A DNA stretch of 64,000 bases, taken from positions 1-64,000 of the IMG/VR virus record IMGVR_UViG_3300031857_000005; one strand, 5' to 3'. A model generated the notes under the pieces. That model was not told the DNA's origin and ran no database searches. It worked only from the letters and a program-made list of their open reading frames with translations. The translations under genes and the position numbers were made by a program. Shown here one piece after another: positions 650-62,413 of the stretch. The stretch's first letter is position 1. Every line of letters begins with the position of its first letter.

Positions 650-1855
650 ATGAAGATTAAATTAGAGTACTTGTGGTTGGACGGATATAATCCAGAACCA
701 AATCTTAGAAGTAAGGTAAAAATTGTAAATTATAATGACGTAAAAAACGCATTTTTAGATGGTAATTTCCCCGAATGGAATTTTGACGGTTCATCAACAC
801 AACAAGCGGAAACTGGTAGTTCGGACTGTATATTAAAACCTGTGAGACATTATAGTTCAGAAATTTTGCAAACTGTGTATATAATGTGTGAGGTTATGAA
901 TCCTGATGGGACTCCACACAAAACAAACACAAGAAGTAATATCGAAAGTGATGATGAAGATATGTGGTTCGGATTTGAACAGGAATATTTCATCTATGAT
1001 AGAAATAATAAATGTATTTTAGGTCACAATGAAAATAATCTTGAACCACAAGGAAAATATTATTGTGGTGTTGGACAATATGTTGCTGGAAGAGACTTTG
1101 TAGAAGAACATTTAAATATGTGTTTGAATTATGGTTTAGATATAACGGGAACAAATGCCGAGGTTGCGATTGGACAATGGGAATACCAAGTCTTTTCAAA
1201 AGGAAAATTAAAGGCTGGTGATGATTTATGGGTGTCCAGATATTTCTTACATAAGTTATCGGAAAAATATGATTATGGTATCGAACTTCACCCAAAACCA
1301 ATCCAAAGAGGAGAATGGAATGGTTCAGGACTTCATACGAATTTTTCATCTAAAAAAATGAGAGAAGAAGGTGGTGAGGAATACTTCAAATCTGTATTCT
1401 CAAGTTTTGAAGCAAGACACCAATCTCATATAGAAAATTATGGTTCAGATAATCAACTACGACTGACTGGTAAGTTTGAGACACAATCAATTGATAAATT
1501 CAGTTGGGGTATATCAGATAGAGGAGCATCAATTCGTGTGCCACAGTCAACCGCAAATGAGTGGAAAGGTTATATTGAAGACAGAAGACCATCTTCAAAT
1601 GCAGATCCTTACAAAATTATATATCAAATTTGTGAATCATTGAGAAATGCTGAAACAATAAATGATATTAAACACAAAATGAACTTTAAACTTGATATGG
1701 ACAATCTTAAGACGGATTTCAAAACATTACCCAATGAGGAACTATTGAAAGAGTATTTGAATGATGAAGAATTTGAATTAGACAGTAAAACGATGGTTGA
1801 TAATAGAAATAATATACCAACTGAAGAAATAAATTTTAACTTGAATGGAAAATAA
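650..1855 (+). CDS. glnII: glutamine synthetase, type II (GSII)
   Basis: EYLWLDG, WNFDGSST.QA, GFEQEY, NAEVA.GQWEYQV, HPKP..G.WNGSG.HTNFS, DRGASIRVP, GYIEDRRPSSNADPY motifs; extra acidic C-terminal tail of about 60 aa. Confidence 0.95.
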   Translation: MKIKLEYLWLDGYNPEPNLRSKVKIVNYNDVKNAFLDGNFPEWNFDGSSTQQAETGSSDCILKPVRHYSSEILQTVYIMCEVMNPDGTPHKTNTRSNIESDDEDMWFGFEQEYFIYDRNNKCILGHNENNLEPQGKYYCGVGQYVAGRDFVEEHLNMCLNYGLDITGTNAEVAIGQWEYQVFSKGKLKAGDDLWVSRYFLHKLSEKYDYGIELHPKPIQRGEWNGSGLHTNFSSKKMREEGGEEYFKSVFSSFEARHQSHIENYGSDNQLRLTGKFETQSIDKFSWGISDRGASIRVPQSTANEWKGYIEDRRPSSNADPYKIIYQICESLRNAETINDIKHKMNFKLDMDNLKTDFKTLPNEELLKEYLNDEEFELDSKTMVDNRNNIPTEEINFNLNGK

Positions 1856-27643: not shown

Positions 27644-27879
27644 TTCAAATTTTTTTAGTAGTATTGTAATCAATATAAAAAAATCAGTATGAAATATTTT
27701 AAATTATTTTTGATGTGGTTGACATTTATTGTCATCGCATCACTTTACGGTGAGTATGTCGTAAGTAGAAATGTTAACGGGTTCCTCCAACTTTTAGGTT
27801 TCGTTGGTATGGTAGGGATCTTTGGAATAATGGGAAACGAAACAATAAAAATTTTAACAAACAATAAGAAAGAAGAAAA

Positions 27880-28830
27880 ATGATTAGTACAGTAATTTTT
27901 GTAGTGTGTTTGATTGCGGCGGTAGTATTCGCAATGAAAACAAGAGGTAATATGTATGTAACAAGTACAGACAGATGGGGAGATAATAGAGAAAAGTTTA
28001 ATGCGGCGTGGTTATTTAAACCACTTGGTATTTTTGTCTTTGGAACTCTTGTATCGTTATTCCAACCATTTGCGGTTGAAAGAATTGATGCGGGACATAA
28101 GGGTATTATTGTAAACTTAACTGGTGACAACAGAGGTGTACAAAATTACCAATATACAACAGGGTGGGTTATGTATAATACTTGGTTTAAACAAGTTCTT
28201 GAGTTCCCAACTTACCAACAACATATTGAGTATGATGATCAGGTGGTAATTACAAAAGGTGGATTCTCAGCAACAATTAAACCATCATTTAACTACTCAT
28301 TAAAACCTGATGCGATTGGTGATATGTTCGTTAATCTTCGTCTTGAGGTTAAAGATATTGAACAAGGATGGTTGAAAAATGCAATCGTTGGAGCAGTTAA
28401 TGATGAAGCAAATAAATGGGAAGTTGATAGTATCTTTAGTAATCGTCAACAATTTGAGGCGGCAATCGTGGCGGAATGTAATAAACGATTGACAAAATGG
28501 TTTGATGTTTCACAGTTGAGAACGAATATTACACCACCTGAAGCGTTACAAGAATCAATTATCGCAAAGACAAAGGCGATACAACAGGCTGAAGCGTCAG
28601 AACAACAGGCAATCGCAGCAATCGCGGAAGGTAAAAGAAAGGTTGCGGTGGCAAGAGCGGATTCTGCTGAGACAGTTATTAATGCCAATGCCGCAGCACT
28701 TGCAATCAAGATTAAACAAGATAGGTTAACACCGTTGTATATTGAATATTTGAAAGCAAATTCGTGGGATGGGAAGTTACCAACAACGGTGGCAGGTAAT
28801 TCAGGAATGTTCTTAAACTTGAATAAATAA
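27880..28830 (+). CDS. SPFH / band-7 / prohibitin domain membrane protein
   Basis: two TM helices, VERIDAGHKGI.V, LRTNI..P..LQESI.AK..A.Q, coiled coil, WDGKLP. Confidence 0.85.
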   Translation: MISTVIFVVCLIAAVVFAMKTRGNMYVTSTDRWGDNREKFNAAWLFKPLGIFVFGTLVSLFQPFAVERIDAGHKGIIVNLTGDNRGVQNYQYTTGWVMYNTWFKQVLEFPTYQQHIEYDDQVVITKGGFSATIKPSFNYSLKPDAIGDMFVNLRLEVKDIEQGWLKNAIVGAVNDEANKWEVDSIFSNRQQFEAAIVAECNKRLTKWFDVSQLRTNITPPEALQESIIAKTKAIQQAEASEQQAIAAIAEGKRKVAVARADSAETVINANAAALAIKIKQDRLTPLYIEYLKANSWDGKLPTTVAGNSGMFLNLNK

Positions 28831-29117
28831 TGGTTAAGGGATTATTTGGGATGGTGATAATAGTTGTTACCATCCTATTTCTAACAGGATGTGGTTGTAG
28901 TGATGAAGAATATTACAAACGAAAGTTTAAATTTAGTCCAGGTGACTTTGTAACACATAAGGTTAGTGGTGATAAAATTTTAATCACCGATACCTCAAGG
29001 TTTAACTCTGAATGTGGTTGTAATGTGGTGTTAGAATATTATGGAGTAAATTCCGCAGAAAACAATAATCTTTACGAAGAAATTGAATTAACAAAATAAA
29101 AAAGATTCAAAATACTT

Positions 29118-29145: not shown

Positions 29146-29573
29146 ATTTCATATTAATTTCTTATTATTAGAAAAAAGAATTATGAGAGAAACAAAATTT
29201 AAGGTAGGAGACAAGGCGTGGAAACCAAAAGGTTATAAATTCCCCTGTACAATAATTGGGGTATTTGAGACAATCAAAGGTGATATCCGTGTTGTAGGTG
29301 AAATGGATGATTACGGATTATTACACATCTTCAACGAAGAACAATTGGATCATTATGGAGAACAATAATATACAATCACCAGTAGAATGGTTGATAGACG
29401 AGGCAATGAAATTAATGATTCAATATATGACAGGAACATTAAATGAAGACACTATTGAAGATGATGTTTATAGAATTGGAACTAGAGCAAAAGAAATGGA
29501 AAAAGAAAGATTGGAATCCCTTAAGGATTTTGATACTTGGAAAGAATGGAAAAACTCTTAATATATTTTAACA

Positions 29574-29831
29574 ATGACAACAAAATACCCAAAACCAGGA
29601 GAAAAATACCAACATTACAAAGGTGGACAATATGAAGTCATTTGTATGTGTAATCACACGGAGACAAATGAACCACTTGTTGTGTATCGTTCATTATCAT
29701 TTGGATCACAATACGCTCGTCCATTTAGTGAGTGGTACGAACAAGTTAGTACTGTAAAAATAGGTGCGTATGATCAACCAATATATAGATTCCAAAGTAC
29801 TGAAGAACCTAATTATGTAATTCACAAATAA
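29574..29831 (+). CDS. DUF1653 family protein
   Basis: YQHYKGGQYEV...HTET.E..VVY.SL...ARP. Confidence 0.8.
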   Translation: MTTKYPKPGEKYQHYKGGQYEVICMCNHTETNEPLVVYRSLSFGSQYARPFSEWYEQVSTVKIGAYDQPIYRFQSTEEPNYVIHK

Positions 29832-31481
29832 AAAAGGTTATGTATAGAATTAAGATTGAAGAAAGAAACAATGGAGAGAAACGATATATACCACAGAAAG
29901 GTTATTTACACATTTCAGGTGGATGGATTAAACGACAAGAAATAAGATGGGATAATTTATTTTGTGGTTCATTTAGTAGTGAATCTCTTGCTTTGGAAAA
30001 AATTGAAGAATACAAAAAACTGGTTGAAAAAAGAAAGGGTGAAGAAGTTAAATCCACAACTTATAAAATGATTGATTGATGAAAGCAAAATTGATTAAAA
30101 CAGAAGTAAACTATATCCTTGAAGATGACAAGGGGGTTGTTATCGCGTCAACATCATTGAATAAAGAAGGATTATCATTATCTATTAAAAACTGCCAAGT
30201 CATTGAGAATGGTTATGATTTGGATGAGTTGGCTGAAGAATTAACAGGGCAATATGCAACATTAAATCCAAAATCATTTAAAAGAGGTGTTTTATATGGT
30301 TTCCAAAAAGCACTTGAGTTGATGGGTGATAATAGGTTTAGTGAGGGGGATGTTATGTTAGGGTGGGACGCTGGCGTTATGTCACAGGTTATATGTCACA
30401 CCACTAATTTTGGTTTAAAACGAGAAGATGAACTTAAAAAACATAGAGAATCATATCAAATAGATTTAAAACCAGCATCACTACAACAAACTGAATGGGA
30501 TGTTGAGATTGTGATGAAAAAAGTTATAGATGAAACTAAAATAATTGGTGCTGTAAAAGGTGTAAAAGGGAGTGGAAATAAAATAACAACATATAAATCA
30601 GTCCCAAAACTTGATGTTGATGGATGTTTAATACTTAAAAGAATTTGATATGGAATGGATTGCAATATCAATGTGCGGTGGAGCTTTATTCTTATGTATA
30701 GTAATGTTAATTGAAAACAACAGATAATAAGATGAAAAATAATAAGGAAGAAACACTGAAAAAGTGGGGAGAGTTGTTAGACAAAATGGGTTTAAATGAT
30801 ACGTCAACAACAAAAATAAATATTGCCGAAATGATGGAGGGTAAAGCATCAAAACTATTGAAAGAAGATATGAATAAAGAAAGATATAATCAAATTATTG
30901 ATGAGGTGTATGACAAATACCTAACCAAGTATGTGGGTTATGATGATGTCCCCTCCAAAGAATTGATCCTGTTTGAGATTAAAAACAATACAGAGTTCTC
31001 CGAAAAGTGGGGATTGAAGATTGAGGAAAAAGAATTGAGTGAAAATGAGAGATATAAAATATTTGATGAAAGAGGTTATGAATTTAGAATGAACAATTGG
31101 TCTAAAGAAGAACAATATGATAAAGCAAACATTCCAACCAAACTAATCACACTTGAATATAACCAAGAAAAAATATACATTTATGAATGAACAAGAAATA
31201 ATCAAAACACAACAGGAGTTAATTGATTTGTTATACTCACAAGTTGTGGACTTATCAATGATGTCCAAGGTTGAATTGGGTGATGATGTAATTGAGGAAA
31301 TTAACCGATTAAAAGGATTGTTGAATGGATGATAAAAAACTATCAAAGGAAGAGATTGAAGATATTGAATACCTCCAAAAAAATATAATTAAATCGTTAA
31401 CACTCCCAATACATTTACACGGACTGAAGGAAGATGATGTTGTGGGTGTGAAATCATTGGAAATAACAAAACAAAATAAAG

Positions 31482-33867: not shown

Positions 33868-34623
33868 ATGAAAAGAATAGAAAAAATATTATTTAAAATA
33901 ATTGATAAGGAAATTACTAATGTTGACACATACTATAATTCTGGTTCACTTTGGTTAATTTTTACTGATGAGAAAAAGTGGGTTGTTGAATTTACTGACA
34001 GTGGTGTATTATGGTTTAATTATTCTTTTTTTAATGATATTTTTTCTTGGATTGGATTAACTGATAAAAAAGAAGAATACATTAAAAAATGGTTTGAAGA
34101 AAGATTTTTATTTAAACCAAAGGTTGAAGATACCATCCAAAATGGGGTGAAGAACACCAAAATGATAGGAATTTGGAATCAAACTCGTGTTGAAGATACC
34201 ATTCAAAATGGGGTGAAACACACCAGTTGTCTAGAGCTGCGTACCCTAAAAATAGTTGAAGATACCATTCAAAATGGGGTGAAGGACACCCTTCCTTGGT
34301 CAAACAATCCGTTGCAAGCAGTTGAATATACCATTCAAAATGGGGTGAAACACACCTTTAAAGGTAACCTCCGTTTTAACGATAAAGTTGAGGACACCAT
34401 TCAAAATGGGGTGAAGGAAATATATAGCACACTACGACGAACTATTCTTGGGGTTGATGATATCCTTAAAAATGGGATTAAGGAAACCAAAAGTATGGGT
34501 GGAAAAAGAAATGGTAGAGTTGATAATACCATTGAAAATGGGGTAAAACATTGTGAAGATGGTGATTGGTTAGATGGAGACGAAAGAATTGATAAAATTG
34601 TTGAAAATGGTTTGAAAGTATAA
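33868..34623 (+). CDS. phage protein whose C-terminal two thirds are 22-aa VEDTIQNGVK repeats encoded by a CRISPR-like array
   Basis: open frame runs through 8 repeats and 7 spacers; stop codon falls at the end of the last degenerate repeat. Confidence 0.75.
   Translation: MKRIEKILFKIIDKEITNVDTYYNSGSLWLIFTDEKKWVVEFTDSGVLWFNYSFFNDIFSWIGLTDKKEEYIKKWFEERFLFKPKVEDTIQNGVKNTKMIGIWNQTRVEDTIQNGVKHTSCLELRTLKIVEDTIQNGVKDTLPWSNNPLQAVEYTIQNGVKHTFKGNLRFNDKVEDTIQNGVKEIYSTLRRTILGVDDILKNGIKETKSMGGKRNGRVDNTIENGVKHCEDGDWLDGDERIDKIVENGLKV
34123..34623. CRISPR. CRISPR-like array: 36-nt repeats with 30-nt unique spacers, type VI-B-like on the minus strand, no cas genes in window
   Basis: repeats at 34123, 34189, 34255, 34321, 34387, 34453, 34519 and degenerate 34588; consensus GTTGAAGATACCATTCAAAATGGGGTGAAACACACC; six 30-nt spacers and one 33-nt spacer; internal palindrome CCATT-CAA-AATGG. 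Confidence 0.65.
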
Positions 34624-34903: not shown

Positions 34904-35602
34904 ATGAAATACAAATTAACAATAATATCTGACACACATAATAAACACAAAGTGTTAAATGGGGATTTACCAGGTGGTGATATTCTACTTCATGGTGGTG
35001 ACATATCCTCAATGGGATATGAACACGAGATTGAGGGGTTTGCCAAGTGGTACGACAAACTTGATAACTACGATCATAAAGCGTTCATTGCAGGAAATCA
35101 CGATTGGGGATTCCAAAATAATGTAGAAAAGATTAAAGGTATTTTGACAGGATATAAATCAATTGATTATATTCAAGACGAGATGATTACCATCCAAGAT
35201 GGTGATAAACCTGAGATTAAAATTTGGGGTAGTCCTTGGCAACCTGAGTTTTATGATTGGGCTTTTAATTTACCAAAAAATGGTGAAGAGTTGAAATCAA
35301 AATGGGACATGATCCCTGAAGGTATTGATATCTTAATTACACACGGACCTGCTTGGGGTATGTTGGATGATGTTGAAGGTAGAAGAGGACAACATTTGGG
35401 TTGTGAATTACTTGCGGAAAGAATCAAACAAATCAAACCAAAGATTCATATCTGTGGACATATCCATAGTGGGTACGGACACTATTATGATGGACACACA
35501 CATTACTTCAATGCGTCAGTATTGAATGAACAATACTTATATACACATACTCCTTGGAATATTGAGTGGAATCCAATAACAAATGAAATTAATTTTTTAT
35601 GA
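34904..35602 (+). CDS. metallophosphoesterase (MPPED-like)
   Basis: ISDTHNKH, HGGD, AGNHD, LITHGP, HICGHIH. Confidence 0.9.
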   Translation: MKYKLTIISDTHNKHKVLNGDLPGGDILLHGGDISSMGYEHEIEGFAKWYDKLDNYDHKAFIAGNHDWGFQNNVEKIKGILTGYKSIDYIQDEMITIQDGDKPEIKIWGSPWQPEFYDWAFNLPKNGEELKSKWDMIPEGIDILITHGPAWGMLDDVEGRRGQHLGCELLAERIKQIKPKIHICGHIHSGYGHYYDGHTHYFNASVLNEQYLYTHTPWNIEWNPITNEINFL

Positions 35603-36049
35603 TGGAATTAGAAGTTAGAACATTAAATATGACTCAATTGAAATTAATTAGATTTGATTTTGATATGTCACAAAGAGAATTGATAGAAGAATTATTTGGT
35701 TCTATGACAAGAGAAGAACAAGTATGGGCTCAAAAAATGAGTTTAACCATTCCAAATATTAGTTCTGAGGAATTTGATAAGGATGTTTGGGACATTGTAT
35801 TGGTGGATAATTATTTACTTGATTGTATAGAATATATACTAAATAAGTACAATACAAGATATACCGTGGCTGACATTAGTGAAAATTATTATCATCGCGA
35901 TATCTTAATTGAAGAGTTGTTATCTACCAGCATTGATTCATATCTTGATGAATACCTAACAATAGACATGGTTCTTGATAGGATTAATGAAATTGGGATT
36001 AATGGGATTAATAAATTTGAAAAATCTTTTTTAGAAAGATACAATTCAA

Positions 36050-36081
36050 TTTGATTATTCAAAAGTAAATTTATATATTTG
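36050..36081 (+). promoter_or_regulatory. Bacteroidota-type promoter
   Basis: TTTG-N20-TATATTTG upstream of ORF 36115-36366. Confidence 0.7.
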
Positions 36082-36409: not shown

Positions 36410-36829
36410 GTGAGAAATATTATTAGACAGATATTAAAAGAAGAAACCAAAATAGCTGACAGAATTAAAAAAATGATTCAGAGGTTATTTCCTGATACAT
36501 TAGTTTATACTGATTTTTTTTACGATAATTATGATGACGAGGATGTTGAGTATAATATAAGAATAACTTATAGATTGTCAGAAAAAACAAGAATTAGTGA
36601 GGATGAATATGGTGGTGTTAAACCATATGAAGGAGTTATAGTTTTTGATATTCTAAAAATTGAGTCAACAACATATGATAGTCGTGATGAATATAAAACT
36701 TTCTATTATGACGATGACTTACCTGAAGTGGTTTGGGATGTGTTCCAAGAATCCTTATATGAAAAGATTGAACCAATTACACCATTCTTATATTCCTATA
36801 TAAGTTTTGATATTAATACAAGAACATAG
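36410..36829 (+). CDS. leader-family protein (IRQILKEE type)
   Basis: GTG start, MRNIIRQILKEE; TATTTAT at 36399-36405. Confidence 0.75.
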   Translation: MRNIIRQILKEETKIADRIKKMIQRLFPDTLVYTDFFYDNYDDEDVEYNIRITYRLSEKTRISEDEYGGVKPYEGVIVFDILKIESTTYDSRDEYKTFYYDDDLPEVVWDVFQESLYEKIEPITPFLYSYISFDINTRT

Positions 36830-37823
36830 ATTGAAATGTGTTAAACGACATTGGTTGTTTAACATTTGGATTATATTTAAATGATACATTCATATCAACA
36901 ACAGGTCTTCTACCTAATGGAATTGAAAGTCCCCTACTAACCTGATACTCCAAAGATTCTTTAATATCGTCCTCACCAACATTTGGCATTTCACCTTTAA
37001 AGAATTCACCATCACCTTTAACAACTTTTCTTTCTTCCATCTTTTGAACATTTGTTACTAGTACATCAACAATCGCTCTATTCTCAATAACATCAAATGA
37101 TGTAATCTTAAATGTGACTTTTATTTTACTGTCACCCCATCCTGAAGTTATAAATAAGTTTTTGTTTTCAACCTCTGAACTTGTTAATGATGATTTAAAA
37201 TGCTCTTCTTTCTTTGATATTAATTCATCTAAAGTAATTCTACCCTCAATAATTTTATTCATTTCTTCTCTTGATACTGAAATCATTTCCTCACCAATTT
37301 CTCTATTATATCTGGTAGGACGAGAATGACTCATATGTTTGGAAGTTGATGAAGAATAATTATAATCTACGGCAAACCATTTACCAAATTTGAATGCGTA
37401 TATTGGATACCAACCATATGATGAAACAACATAAACCCATTCATTATCACGACTATTCTTCCAATTACCCTCCAAGTTAGAACCTTTAAATGGTATTTTG
37501 TCGGCAACATAAGTTGAGGATAATGTATTACTTGTTCTTTTTTGATTTAAGAACCTTTTTGGATCCTTGTAATTAGATTGAGTTACATTCTCATAATCAC
37601 CATCAGGACGATAGTTTAATGTGTAGATATTATAATATTTACGAGCTTCATTCCTTGGAATATTAAATGTGGATAATGAGTTCTCAAAGAAGTCTAACAT
37701 CTTTTTTTCAGTTCCCAAATCTCTTTTAAATTTATTAACAAATTTAAAAAGACGAATCTCCATCGGATTGAAGATACTTTTTTCAGTTTCTTCCTTTATA
37801 ATGTATTTAATTAAATCTTTCAT
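36813..37823 (-). CDS. leader-family protein (MKDLIKYIIKEE)
   Basis: minus-strand TATTTAT at 37830-37836; YVVSSYGWYPIY...YSSSTSKH module. Confidence 0.8.
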   Translation of the reverse strand: MKDLIKYIIKEETEKSIFNPMEIRLFKFVNKFKRDLGTEKKMLDFFENSLSTFNIPRNEARKYYNIYTLNYRPDGDYENVTQSNYKDPKRFLNQKRTSNTLSSTYVADKIPFKGSNLEGNWKNSRDNEWVYVVSSYGWYPIYAFKFGKWFAVDYNYSSSTSKHMSHSRPTRYNREIGEEMISVSREEMNKIIEGRITLDELISKKEEHFKSSLTSSEVENKNLFITSGWGDSKIKVTFKITSFDVIENRAIVDVLVTNVQKMEERKVVKGDGEFFKGEMPNVGEDDIKESLEYQVSRGLSIPLGRRPVVDMNVSFKYNPNVKQPMSFNTFQSMFLY

Positions 37824-56302: not shown

Positions 56303-56549
56303 AATTAAAGGATTTATTATAATAAAAGAGTATAGACTCAAATCATTCATTCCATCTTACCGTTCGTAAACTCACTACAGATTCCATTCATAATTTTATC
56401 CTATACTCTTTGTTTACAGTAAACAGGTTAGTGTAAACAACTATAACCAAATAAGGATACAACCTTATAATCCATCATTATAAGTCTCCTACCTTATAAT
56501 GTAAAATACTATTAACATTATGTAGGGTATTTGTAAAAAGTATTTCCCC

Positions 56550-56612
56550 CATTTAAATCACTCCACTTCGTTCCGTTCTCCCTCATTTAAATCACTACAC
56601 TTCGTTCCGTTC
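56550..56612. repeat. 29-bp direct repeat x2 in the long non-coding region
   Basis: CATTTAAATCACT(C/A)CACTTCGTTCCGTTC at 56550-56578 and 56584-56612. Confidence 0.9.
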
Positions 56613-61873: not shown

Positions 61874-62413
61874 ATGAACAGAAGCTATAGTAAAATCAGG
61901 CATATACAAGAATCTAATTTAAAATTGGAAAAAAGATTCTTAAATGAACAAATAACAACGGGAACAACAACGGGAACAACAACGGGAACAACTCAAGTTG
62001 ACATTAATGAAGAACAAGGTATAACTCCTTCGTGGGAATCAAAATACACCGAATGGGCGAATAATAAATCAGGCAATCCCGAATTGGCAATGAAACTAAT
62101 GTCAAGATATTGGGATTTAAAAAATCATCCTGAAATGCCTGTTAAGTACAAAGATTTTAATAATTTAACTGACGCTAACGAACTACAAGATCTTATTGAT
62201 GAAATGGAAGAGGCGGTAATAATTAACAAACTGAATCAAGACATTACAAGAGTAAATCATTTTGGGGATTATCATGATGGTAGATATCAATCCGATTATC
62301 ATAAAAAACATGATATAAGTGTTGGTCCTGAGGCTAAAAAAGAGAGAGAAAAAAGACAAGAAGAAAGAAGACGAGAAGAAGATAGAAAATGGTTTGAAAG
62401 AATGAGACACTGA
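61874..62413 (+). CDS. leader-family protein (SKIRHIQESN type) with TTGT repeats
   Basis: MNRSYSKIRHIQESNLKLEKRFLNE; 12-bp unit ACAACGGGAACA x3 at 61955-61990. Confidence 0.75.
   Translation: MNRSYSKIRHIQESNLKLEKRFLNEQITTGTTTGTTTGTTQVDINEEQGITPSWESKYTEWANNKSGNPELAMKLMSRYWDLKNHPEMPVKYKDFNNLTDANELQDLIDEMEEAVIINKLNQDITRVNHFGDYHDGRYQSDYHKKHDISVGPEAKKEREKRQEERRREEDRKWFERMRH

What the first reader, a model, noticed from the sequence alone, without database searches (positions are those of the whole stretch)
34123..34623. A CRISPR-like 36/30 array, type VI-B-like, that is read in frame as protein
Seen: seven 36-nt repeats at an exact 66-nt period (34123, 34189, 34255, 34321, 34387, 34453, 34519) plus a degenerate eighth ending in the TAA stop, separated by unique 30-nt spacers (last one 33 nt). 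Degeneracy is polar (copies 1-5 conserved, 6-8 decayed), as in CRISPR arrays. The reverse complement GGTGTGTTTCACCCCATTTTGAATGGTATCTTCAAC has the length, CAAC end and central CATTTTG..GGT stem-loop that I recall for Cas13b (VI-B) repeats of Bacteroidota, whose spacers are also about 30 nt. Spacers 2, 3 and 5 are 40-47% GC by hand count and contain non-Ala GC dinucleotides (GAG-CTG-CGT, TTG-CAA, AGC) that this genome otherwise avoids, so they look foreign. Yet all 71 spacer codons are stop-free in the frame of ORF 33868-34623, and several repeat differences are synonymous (GAT/GAC, ATT/ATC, AAG/AAA). Inference: a cas-less phage array that borrows or decoys host Cas13b (RNA anti-CRISPR or anti-competitor guides) and has been co-opted as a spacer-diversified protein tail, or does both. 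I did not find an antisense promoter next to the array.
Basis: partly seen in the sequence, partly recalled or inferred. Interest (0 to 1): 0.92.

Follow-up and report, generated by a model that had tools for sequence, protein, structure and literature searches.

The report
Phage protein with swappable peptide cassettes
The CRISPR-looking array is the coding sequence of a phage protein made of a conserved 10-12-residue motif alternating with short hypervariable peptide cassettes that related phages swap at the conserved repeats. It is not a CRISPR array, but it belongs to a large, undescribed, virus-only family of fast-diversifying proteins.

Summary
Seven 36-nt repeats lie exactly 66 nt apart, an eighth follows at +69, and all sit inside ORF 33868-34623.

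The CRISPR/Cas13b reading fails:
- There is no Rfam CRISPR-DR match, no stable or covarying hairpin, and no GUUG/CAAC end pairing.
- There are no cas genes and no protospacers.
- The repeat is absent from 185,579 prokaryotic species genomes.
- 367 of 369 repeat-to-repeat intervals in relatives are multiples of 3, and none of 326 distinct linkers has an in-frame stop.

The gene belongs to a virus-only family with more than 2,400 homologues. Each has an ~85-aa N-terminal domain followed by 2-26 units of VEDTIQNGVKxT plus a 6-40-aa variable linker.

A phage 96% identical to the window keeps the repeats and the last three linkers, but carries five unrelated linkers where the window has four. Other lineages show cassette insertion, deletion, duplication and reordering.

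The repeat is conserved at synonymous sites across 17 lineages.

Best reading: recombination at the conserved cores shuffles cassettes. These are possibly loops on a beta-hairpin scaffold turning at Asn-Gly. The function is probably variable binding in a phage-host conflict. The functional claim, the fold and the origin of new cassettes are all unproven.

The parts
33868..34623 (+). Complete gene (251 aa) of an uncharacterised, virus-only protein family: an N-terminal domain followed by a repeat/cassette array.
   Evidence: ORF list. 2,459 homologues at E<=0.01. Complete ORFs in 80 IMG/VR loci. No Pfam, PHROG-function, NCBIfam or PADLOC match.
33868..34122 (+). Conserved N-terminal alpha/beta domain (~85 aa) with invariant D20, Y22, W29, W38, E41, W49, N51, F55 and W75.
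   Evidence: Alignment A2. AlphaFold pLDDT ~90 for residues 1-84. The profile finds 458 cluster representatives, and in the 150 best listed the match starts within the first ~50 residues. No PDB relative by sequence or fold.
34123..34422 (+). Five well-kept repeat cores (34123-34158, 34189-34224, 34255-34290, 34321-34356, 34387-34422) encoding V-E-D/Y-T-I-Q-N-G-V-K-x-T/I. They interleave with four linkers: 34159-34188 KMIGIWNQTR, 34225-34254 SCLELRTLKI, 34291-34320 LPWSNNPLQA and 34357-34386 FKGNLRFNDK.
   Evidence: These four linkers are found only in contigs of the same phage genotype. In the 96%-identical phage L001 they are replaced by five unrelated linkers.
34423..34623 (+). Conserved C-terminal module: linkers YSTLRRTILG (34423-34452), KSMGGKRNGR (34489-34518) and EDGDWLDGDER (34555-34587), interleaved with degenerate cores VDDILKNGIKET (34453-34488), VDNTIENGVKHC (34519-34554) and IDKIVENGLK (34588-34617), then the stop codon.
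   Evidence: These three linkers recur, with at most 3 mismatches, in 30, 46 and 99 of 267 family proteins. Linkers nearest the 3' end are the ones shared across lineages (57/48/36%, against 18-25% at the 5' end). pN/pS among related cassettes is 0.36. AlphaFold pLDDT ~80 for the last ~18 residues.

Best explanation
The array is translated. It is the body of a phage protein built from an ~85-aa folded N-terminal domain and a tandem series of ~22-aa units. Each unit has a conserved motif (V-E-D-T-I-Q-N-G-V-K-x-T) and a hypervariable linker of about 10 aa (6-40 aa across the family).

Shown:
- The frame is kept open and repeat-to-repeat distances are multiples of three throughout a family of more than 2,400 virus-only proteins.
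- Near-identical phages carry different sets, numbers and orders of linkers, while the repeats between them and the flanks stay the same.
- A three-cassette C-terminal module is conserved under purifying selection.
- The repeat's nucleotide sequence is conserved at synonymous sites across lineages whose N-domains are below 70% identical.

Inferred mechanism: the 30-36-nt conserved cores act as in-register homology tracts. General homologous recombination then deletes, duplicates, inserts and swaps whole cassettes without breaking the frame. This includes unequal crossing-over and gene conversion between alleles, tandem paralogues and co-infecting relatives. Well-kept cores therefore go with fast cassette turnover at the 5' part of the array. 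Decayed cores go with the stable, functionally constrained 3' module. That pattern mimics the leader-to-trailer polarity of a CRISPR array.

Inferred structure (low confidence): each conserved motif forms a beta-hairpin around the Asn-Gly turn, and the linkers are the loops that join successive hairpins. This would be a conserved scaffold displaying combinatorially variable loops.

Inferred function (speculative): a variable binding or decoy surface in a phage-host or phage-phage conflict. It is encoded in the accessory/early region of large aquatic phages.
For: Coding:
- 0 in-frame stops in 166 codons in the window, against 5-23 in the other frames.
- None of 326 distinct family linkers has an in-frame stop, against 32-67% in the other frames.
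- 367 of 369 distinct DNA intervals between exact cores are multiples of 3.
- All loci that are not cut by a contig end carry complete ORFs with 2-26 repeats.

Family:
- 2,459 homologues and 458 representatives at 50% clustering.
- Absent from 185,579 prokaryotic species genomes and from cultured phages.

Cassette turnover:
- The window and L001 are ~96% identical genome-wide. The N-domain and the last three units are ~98% identical, but four linkers are replaced by five unrelated ones with breakpoints in the repeats.
- L017_1, L018_1, L021_1 and L022 show insertion, deletion, duplication and replacement of cassettes behind near-identical N-termini (first 40 residues as printed).
- 580 distinct linkers among 942, with identical linkers at different array positions in different proteins.
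- Linker sharing falls from 57% at >97% N-domain identity to ~2% at 40-50% (1-3% over all bands below 70%).
- Linkers within one gene are no more alike than random pairs (0.278 vs 0.277 nt identity), so they do not arise by duplication and divergence.

Nucleotide-level conservation of the core:
- Thr is ACC in 89% of repeats (baseline 31%). Gly is GGG in 67% (baseline 12%). Val-1 is GTT in 96%, but Val-9 is GTG in 61%.
- 12 of 17 lineage consensus sequences fit the same 30-nt core exactly, and the other 5 differ at 2-5 positions.
- Third-position identity is 0.71 in repeats and 0.86 in shared cassettes, against 0.55-0.57 in N-domains of divergent pairs.

Selection on peptides: pN/pS is 0.36.

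Structure: a single-sequence AlphaFold model of the 26-repeat homologue in L072 (pLDDT 70, pTM 0.65) places all 26 NG dipeptides at two-residue turns between strands. That Asn-Gly favours type I' hairpin turns is established knowledge.

Precedent: recombination within conserved motifs swaps hypervariable segments in T-even gp38 adhesins (PMC3157838).
Against: - No experiment shows that the protein is made or what it binds.
- The MSA-based AlphaFold model of the window protein scores the whole repeat region as disordered (pLDDT ~30). Only 1 of 5 single-sequence models of the homologue is confident. Foldseek matches to beta-solenoids are not significant (best E 0.004, TM ~0.2).
- Recombination is inferred from mosaic patterns. 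It was not observed, and breakpoints were located by eye in one pair only.
- The origin of new cassettes is unexplained: the window's four variable linkers have no relative in 267 family proteins or in 1.75 Mb of related loci.
- Long, nearly identical array blocks between distant lineages are rare. Synonymous conservation of the core across lineages is therefore not fully explained by exchange, and may reflect a constraint I did not identify.
- The gene neighbourhood (thymidylate synthase, phosphoesterase, RNA ligase, small ORFs) gives no functional clue and is not a tail-fibre module.
Confidence: 0.7

Rival explanations
1. One reading: a cas-less CRISPR (type VI-B-like) array carried by the phage. 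It would be transcribed and processed into ~66-nt guides or decoys for a host Cas13b, whether or not it is also translated.
For: In the window the unit geometry is 36 + 30 = 66 nt. That equals the VI-B repeat, spacer and crRNA lengths. One end of the minus-strand repeat is CAAC, and there is a UUUU run in the middle. Decay and conservation are polar. Spacers differ between near-identical phages. The only database relative of a neighbouring gene is a Flavobacterium phage.
Against: - No Rfam CRISPR-DR hit.
- Repeat folding equals that of shuffles, and the ends do not pair (GGUG/CAAC).
- No covariation in 392 units.
- Across the family, spacing is variable but 99.5% of intervals are multiples of 3, and no linker has an in-frame stop.
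- Repeat variation follows the amino-acid motif.
- No cas gene is present.
- No protospacer was found in IMG/VR or in related loci.
- The 26-nt core is absent from 185,579 bacterial and archaeal species genomes, so no host array with this repeat is known.
- Promoter-like sites are no more frequent than in shuffles.
Confidence: 0.02
2. The repeat region is intrinsically disordered, and the conserved motif is a short linear motif. It would be either a multivalent docking site for a host or phage protein, or a processing site that releases the cassettes as short peptides (a polyprotein or multi-core precursor).
For: The MSA-based AlphaFold model gives pLDDT ~30 for residues 85-233. Cassette lengths are very free (6-40 aa), and some cassettes are conserved mini-modules of 27-45 aa. 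pN/pS of 0.36 shows that the peptides themselves matter. Copy number varies from 2 to 26.
Against: The motif is rich in beta-branched residues around an Asn-Gly pair, and one AlphaFold model folds every unit as a hairpin. No protease or peptide-modifying enzyme is conserved next to the gene. The residue before the motif is not conserved, as a cleavage site would require.
Confidence: 0.13
3. A dedicated diversification system: the conserved nucleotide core is the recognition site of a specific recombinase or nuclease, or a templated mechanism, that inserts or exchanges cassettes. General homologous recombination would not be the driver.
For: Synonymous sites of the core ACCATTCAAAATGG(G)GTG are conserved across most of 17 lineages, well beyond codon bias. 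The core contains a 5+5 inverted repeat. New cassettes have no detectable donor and are compositionally unlike the rest of the genome: R, C, H, S and P are enriched, and GC12 is 0.45 against 0.36. A 151-aa ORF of unknown function is a conserved neighbour in about 49 loci.
Against: No recombinase, reverse transcriptase or nuclease is conserved beside the gene. The neighbour has no recognisable catalytic family. Silent donor cassettes are absent from the window. Pairing in the inverted repeat is no better than expected from column composition. Duplicated cassettes and whole-unit indels are what ordinary unequal crossing-over produces.
Confidence: 0.1
4. A neutral, expanding and contracting low-complexity tail with no function of its own. 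The variation would be drift in a dispensable region.
For: Copy number and content vary freely, and some family members are short (2-5 units). The region may be disordered.
Against: The motif is kept at the amino-acid level in more than 2,400 proteins. A C-terminal module is conserved across lineages. pN/pS is 0.36. The frame is never lost. Many phages keep two tandem paralogues.
Confidence: 0.05

Closest known systems
gp38 tail-fibre adhesins of T2/T6-like phages (glycine-rich motifs alternating with hypervariable segments)
   Same: The layout matches: an N-terminal conserved domain, then short conserved motifs alternating with hypervariable segments, then a small conserved C-terminal end. 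In gp38, genetic exchanges occur within or near the conserved motifs and produce chimeric specificities, and the conserved motifs are thought to form the structural core with the variable segments as loops (PMC3157838).
   Different: There is no sequence or profile similarity (no Pfam hit). The motif here is VEDTIQNGVK, not glycine-rich. The number of units is open-ended (2-26, against a fixed 4 HVS and 5 GRM). The gene is not next to tail-fibre genes. Binding function is untested.
Type VI-B (Cas13b) CRISPR arrays and virus-borne mini-CRISPR arrays
   Same: In this window the geometry is 36-nt repeat + 30-nt spacer = 66 nt. Repeat decay is polar. Spacer content differs between strains. Viruses are known to carry cas-less mini-arrays (PMC6858448; VI-B features from bioRxiv 10.1101/092577).
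   Different: This array is translated, with spacing constrained to multiples of 3. It has no GUUG/CAAC end pairing, no cas genes, no protospacers and no matching host repeat.
'False-CRISPR' tandem repeats inside protein-coding genes (Zhang and Ye 2017, PMC5294841)
   Same: [quoted passage not shown] This is exactly the kind of element that repeat-spacer detectors mis-call.
   Different: That class is defined by lack of spacer diversity. Here the 'spacers' are highly diverse and turn over between strains.
Segmental gene-conversion antigenic variation loci such as Borrelia VlsE (invariant regions alternating with variable regions). From my own knowledge, not tested here.
   Same: Invariant segments alternate with variable ones, and variation comes from recombinational replacement of segments rather than point mutation.
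   Different: No archive of silent cassettes lies nearby. The pool appears to be spread over the phage population and over tandem paralogues. The carrier is a virus, not a cell.
Beta-hairpin repeat proteins with ~20-aa periods, such as cell-wall/choline-binding repeats and clostridial CROPs. From my own knowledge.
   Same: The period is ~20-22 aa, and one AlphaFold model predicts a hairpin plus a loop per unit.
   Different: There is no sequence similarity. The prediction is weak and Foldseek matches are not significant. The loops here are hypervariable, not conserved ligand pockets.

Membership tests
CRISPR array, type VI-B (Cas13b) | 36-nt direct repeat | tested here: inconclusive
   A 36-nt unit can be delimited in the window. 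Across the family, only 30 nt (10 codons) are consistently conserved, and the next two codons are only partly conserved.
CRISPR array, type VI-B (Cas13b) | Spacers of well-conserved length (~30 nt) | tested here: not met
   Spacers are 30 nt in the window (33 nt for the last). In relatives the period ranges over 18-26+ aa, and DNA intervals of 63, 66, 69, 117, 129, 132, 135 ... nt occur, all multiples of 3.
CRISPR array, type VI-B (Cas13b) | Complementary 5'-GUUG and CAAC-3' repeat ends with a poly-U open loop that give a defined fold (bioRxiv 10.1101/092577) | tested here: not met
   The plus strand reads GUUG...CACC and the minus strand GGUG...CAAC. The minimum-energy folds do not pair the ends, and z-scores are -0.25 to -0.76 against shuffles. 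RNAalifold finds no consensus structure in 392 units. No Rfam CRISPR-DR hit.
CRISPR array, type VI-B (Cas13b) | cas13b or other cas genes in the locus, or a host array with the same repeat | tested here: not met
   The largest ORF in the 64-kb window is 536 aa. Neighbouring genes have no PADLOC hits. The 26-nt core has 0 matches in 185,579 species genomes.
CRISPR array, type VI-B (Cas13b) | Spacers derived from foreign nucleic acids (protospacers) | tested here: not met
   No hits outside the family's own arrays in 0.45 Mb of flanking phage DNA or in 1.75 Mb of loci. Exact searches of spacers 2 and 3 in IMG/VR find only the same phage. Mismatched protospacers in larger databases were not searched.
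CRISPR array, type VI-B (Cas13b) | Non-coding array processed into crRNAs | tested here: not met
   On the coding side, the array lies inside a conserved ORF, 367/369 intervals are multiples of 3, and 0/326 linkers carry in-frame stops. RNA processing itself cannot be tested with these tools.
T-even gp38-type adhesin | Sequence homology to gp38, glycine-rich motifs, and a position downstream of the distal tail-fibre gene | tested here: not met
   No Pfam or PHROG match to any adhesin. The motif contains a single Gly. The neighbours are thymidylate synthase, a phosphoesterase and small ORFs.
T-even gp38-type adhesin | Conserved motifs alternating with hypervariable segments that are exchanged by recombination at the motifs | tested here: met
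   This is a likeness in design and evolution, not in ancestry.
False-CRISPR tandem repeat (Zhang and Ye 2017) | Repeat-spacer appearance without cas genes and without spacer diversity | tested here: not met
   The first two features are met. Spacer diversity, however, is high: 580 distinct linkers of 942, with strain-level replacement.
Diversity-generating retroelement target | A nearby reverse transcriptase and template repeat, with variation confined to adenine positions | tested here: not met
   Linkers differ at all positions and in length. No second copy of the array exists in the window. No RT was seen among the annotated neighbours. The whole window was not scanned for RT.
Beta-hairpin repeat / beta-solenoid proteins | A regular hairpin-loop unit stacking into an elongated beta structure | tested here: inconclusive
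   One of five single-sequence AlphaFold models (pLDDT 70) gives hairpins with all 26 NG dipeptides at turns. The MSA model of the window protein is disordered. The best Foldseek match is E 0.004 with TM ~0.2.

The most novel reading that the evidence does not exclude
The family is a phage-borne combinatorial diversity system: an open-ended, in-frame cassette array. Its nucleotide-conserved 30-36-nt cores would be maintained because they promote, or are specifically recognised for, cassette exchange. This would give phage populations a shuffled repertoire of loop peptides on a common scaffold, a viral counterpart of VlsE- or VLR-type receptors, used to bind or blunt rapidly changing host targets. 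New cassettes would enter by a mechanism not yet known.
Probability: 0.15. Interest if true: 0.85.

Novelty: new variant of a known kind. Interest (0 to 1): 0.5.

Why it matters
Two reasons.

Practical: this family, with more than 2,400 members in aquatic phage metagenomes, mimics a 36/30 CRISPR array almost perfectly, including polarity and strain-specific 'spacers'. It will be mis-called by repeat-spacer detectors and by eye. The multiple-of-three spacing and the open frame are a simple filter.

Biological: it is an unannotated, virus-only protein family. Whole peptide cassettes turn over between phages that are ~96% identical elsewhere. The repeat is conserved even at synonymous sites across most of 17 deep lineages, and many phages keep two tandem copies. 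Known fast-evolving phage loci of this design (gp38 adhesins, DGR targets) decide host range. A new open-ended version located outside the tail-fibre module may mark an unknown interface of phage-host conflict, and could serve as a natural scaffold for loop display. I could not trace the source of new cassettes or explain the synonymous conservation. Both questions can be addressed with population metagenomics and simple crosses.

Tried and rejected
- Rfam at gathering and at permissive thresholds found no CRISPR-DR or other RNA family. No tRNAs were found.
- Folding of single repeats on both strands gave energies no different from shuffles. RNAalifold and pair counts on 392 units showed no structure and no covariation.
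- Protospacer searches found nothing outside the family's arrays: 300 linkers against masked flanks, window spacers against 1.75 Mb of loci, and exact spacers 2 and 3 in IMG/VR.
- Genome collection searches gave zero hits for the repeat core and for the N-domain, so there is no host or prophage clue.
- Cultured phages gave only weak repeat-on-repeat hits to Bacillus phage tape-measure proteins (E 4e-7 to 6e-4, 25-29% identity). I judged these not to be homology.
- Pfam, PHROGs, NCBIfam and PADLOC found no family. Sub-threshold-looking matches of homologues to Dodecin, HU-CCDC81 and DUF4258 cover 10-30 residues of the repeat motif and are summed over repeats. I rejected them as domain assignments.
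- Sequence search of the PDB and Foldseek searches against PDB found nothing significant. BFVD returned only uncharacterised proteins of uncultured phages.
- The cREC_REC gene downstream of two distant homologues is not related to the window's downstream genes.
- A search for long, near-identical array blocks between distant lineages found only one 104-nt block, shared between one gene and two near-identical genes, at >=92% identity, and modest excesses elsewhere. Frequent recent cross-lineage transfer is therefore not demonstrated.
- Literature searches for the motif strings returned nothing relevant.
Full report
**1. The observation**

The sequence at 34123-34623 is as described. The repeat finder reports seven copies with start-to-start spacing of exactly 66 nt and an eighth at +69. 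Identity to the best copy is 85, 88, 100, 90, 83, 73 and 68%. A 26-nt core occurs five times with at most 3 mismatches, against none in 100 shuffles. The array lies inside ORF 33868-34623 (+, 251 aa). From 34123 to 34620 the ORF frame has no stop in 166 codons, while the other five frames have 5-23. Spacer GC values are 0.30, 0.40, 0.47, 0.30, 0.43, 0.33 and 0.42. The window is about 30% GC and almost entirely plus-strand coding. It looks like the accessory region of a large phage. It carries a glutamine-synthetase-like gene, an RNA ligase, an SPFH protein, thymidylate synthase and a metallophosphoesterase. The same genotype occurs on contigs of 304, 312 and 63.5 kb. The only hit among cultured phages is a 69%-identical phosphoesterase of Flavobacterium phages.

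**2. Is it a CRISPR array?**

I tested the features that define type VI-B arrays, taken from Smargon et al. (bioRxiv 10.1101/092577). These are a 36-nt repeat, complementary GUUG/CAAC ends, a poly-U loop, 30-nt spacers and a cas13b locus.

- The repeat ends are GUUG...CACC on the plus strand and GGUG...CAAC on the minus strand.
- The predicted folds do not pair the ends and are no more stable than shuffles (z -0.25 to -0.76).
- Rfam, which contains the CRISPR-DR families, gives nothing at gathering or permissive thresholds.
- RNAalifold on 392 distinct units from the family predicts no structure on either strand. The small CCATT/AATGG inverted repeat pairs no more often than column composition predicts.
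- No ORF in the window exceeds 536 aa, and the neighbouring genes match no defence-system model.
- Promoter-like sites are not enriched.
- No protospacers were found: locally, or by exact search of spacers 2 and 3 in IMG/VR, which returned only the same phage.
- The 26-nt core has no match in one genome from each of 185,579 bacterial and archaeal species.

Evidence from relatives is decisive. Measured at the DNA level without any ORF call, 367 of 369 distinct intervals between exact cores are multiples of three. These include 63, 69, 117, 129, 135 and 183 nt. None of 326 distinct linkers has a stop in the coding frame, against 32-67% in the other frames. The CRISPR reading is rejected.

**3. 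What it is**

The protein has 2,459 homologues at E<=0.01, with lengths of 187-439 aa among the best 120. A profile of the N-terminal domain finds 458 cluster representatives among 1.84 billion proteins. In the 150 best, the domain lies at or near the N-terminus, and nearly all are followed by the motif.

The family is absent from the prokaryotic genome collection and from cultured phages. It has no Pfam, PHROG-function, NCBIfam or PADLOC assignment. I found no paper containing its motifs.

The architecture has two parts. The first is an ~85-aa domain with invariant Trp, Tyr and Asp positions. AlphaFold predicts it confidently (pLDDT ~90, alpha-beta4-alpha-alpha), and it has no structural relative in the PDB. 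The second is a series of 2-26 units. The unit period is 22 aa in about half of cases, but 18-26 aa and longer are common. The motif logo is V-E-D-T-I-Q-N-G-V-K. Many phages carry two family genes in tandem.

**4. The linkers behave like cassettes**

The ENA contig L001 is ~96% identical to the window over more than 20 kb. In the gene itself, the first 255 nt and the last ~230 nt are ~98% identical. The window's four middle linkers, however, are replaced by five unrelated ones (two of them 27 nt), while the repeats between them are kept. Both alleles were assembled independently several times (13 contigs for P0001; three contigs for the window allele). Every repeat is bridged by unique linkers, so assembly chimerism is unlikely.

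In another lineage, five near-identical genes differ by insertion, deletion, duplication and replacement of whole units.

Among the window protein and its 120 best homologues there are 580 distinct linkers out of 942. Identical linkers occur at different positions of different arrays.

Sharing falls quickly with divergence of the N-domain: 57% at >97% identity, 30% at 90-97%, and 1-3% below 70%. Linkers within one gene are no more similar to each other than random pairs, so they do not arise by duplication and divergence in place.

The window's linkers 1-4 have no relative in 267 family proteins or in 1.75 Mb of related loci. Linkers 5-7 recur in 30, 46 and 99 proteins.

Family-wide, the linkers nearest the 3' end are the ones conserved across lineages (57, 48 and 36%, against 18-25% at the 5' end). 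Related cassettes show pN/pS of 0.36.

The gene therefore has a conserved N-domain, a fast-turnover cassette zone behind well-kept cores, and a conserved three-cassette C-terminal module with decayed cores. That explains the CRISPR-like polarity.

**5. Nucleotide-level conservation**

Codon use in the motif is position-specific and unlike that of the rest of the gene.

| Residue in motif | Codon | Share in repeats | Baseline in N-domains |
|---|---|---|---|
| Thr | ACC | 89% | 31% |
| Gly | GGG | 67% | 12% |
| Val-1 | GTT | 96% | 64% |
| Val-9 | GTG | 61% | 17% |

The 30-nt consensus GTTGAAGAYACCATTCAAAATGGGGTGAAA is the exact consensus in 12 of 17 lineages whose N-domains are less than 70% identical. 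The other 5 differ from it at 2-5 positions. Third-position identity at identical residues is about 0.70 in repeats whatever the divergence. In N-domains of pairs below 50% identity it is 0.55-0.57. It is 0.86 in the cassettes shared across lineages.

Occasional exchange between lineages explains part of this. But long near-identical blocks between distant lineages are rare. A constraint on the DNA itself remains possible. The simplest candidate is the need for a homology tract long enough for recombination. This part is inference.

The array is also somewhat richer in GC than the genome. GC3 is 0.31-0.34 against 0.23, and linker GC12 is 0.45 against 0.36. The linkers are enriched in Arg, Cys, His, Ser and Pro.

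**6. Structure and function**

Two AlphaFold runs disagree.

- With a 121-sequence alignment, the window protein's repeat region scores pLDDT ~30, and the last ~18 residues score ~80.
- In single-sequence mode, the 26-unit homologue in L072 gives one confident model out of five (pLDDT 70, pTM 0.65). Every unit is a beta-hairpin, and all 26 Asn-Gly dipeptides sit at the two-residue turns.

Asn-Gly is the classic type I' hairpin turn, and the motif is rich in beta-branched residues (established knowledge). I therefore favour a hairpin scaffold with the linkers as connecting loops, but with low confidence. Foldseek gives only weak likeness to beta-solenoids such as antigen 43.

The genomic context in three lineages is accessory or early-type genes, not tail fibres.

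The closest known design is the gp38 adhesin of T2/T6-like phages. There, conserved glycine-rich motifs alternate with hypervariable segments, and recombination at the conserved motifs swaps specificity (PMC3157838). The likeness is in design and mode of evolution, not in sequence or genomic position.

I therefore propose a variable binding or decoy surface under diversifying pressure. This proposal is speculative.

**7. Verdict**

The CRISPR interpretation is refuted. This is a member of a large, undescribed, virus-only family of cassette-shuffled repeat proteins. The kind of system (conserved motifs flanking recombining hypervariable segments, and protein repeats that mimic CRISPR arrays as in PMC5294841) is known. 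This open-ended, CRISPR-mimicking variant with synonymous-site conservation is not.

Open points: the source of new cassettes, the reason for the nucleotide conservation, the fold, the partner and the function.

Noticed in passing
window 35599-36054 (+): A 151-aa acidic ORF of unknown function has homologues in 49 loci outside this phage's own contigs. Where its position could be checked (~24 loci), it lies upstream of the repeat-protein gene(s) on the same strand, immediately upstream in several. In the window it lies ~1 kb downstream. It has no Pfam, PHROG, NCBIfam or PDB relative. It may be a functional partner.
   Followed up: partly
L013-L027 and others (e.g. L017:2983-3669 and L017:3674-4936): Many related phages carry two family genes in tandem, each with its own N-domain and an array of different length. 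One contig (IMGVR_UViG_3300042467_001553) has copies at two separate sites (L019, L047).
   Followed up: partly
homologues P0027, P0106, P0119, P0162, P0163, P0086: Some 'linkers' are conserved mini-modules of 27-45 aa that recur across lineages, for example TPGGYLGSIEMKGK... and PLPAQDGNRDWGNYYHGKEDRTKP.... P0086 has an insert of about 40 aa. The array can therefore carry larger payloads than 10-aa loops.
   Followed up: no
window 27685-29085 and 29567-30869, compared with L001: The 96%-identical phage L001 lacks the ~1.4-kb segment holding the SPFH/Band_7 gene (27880-28830). It also carries mostly non-alignable sequence in place of window ~29.6-30.9 kb. These are strain-level gene-content differences near the array.
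   Followed up: no
window 56545-56612: A 34-nt direct repeat occurs twice (94% match, the highest TRF score in the window). It sits in a C-rich stretch within the 56-60 kb region, where the otherwise steady positive GC skew drops to ~0.07. This may be a regulatory or intergenic element.
   Followed up: no
window 61954-61992: A perfect 12-nt tandem repeat, AACAACGGGAAC, in 3.2 copies (100% match).
   Followed up: no
window 36813-37823 (-): A lone minus-strand gene (336 aa, no family match) in a long plus-strand block. It is conserved at the same place in L001-L004.
   Followed up: no
window 650-1855 (+): A glutamine-synthetase-like ORF (Gln-synt_C and Gln-synt_N domains) encoded by the phage. 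It is a candidate auxiliary metabolic gene.
   Followed up: no
window 34112-34303 (-): The antisense strand of repeats 1-3 holds a 63-aa ORF with its own repeat (SPHFEWYLQ). It is broken by stops elsewhere in the array (5 stops per antisense frame), so it is most likely a by-product of the sense repeat.
   Followed up: partly
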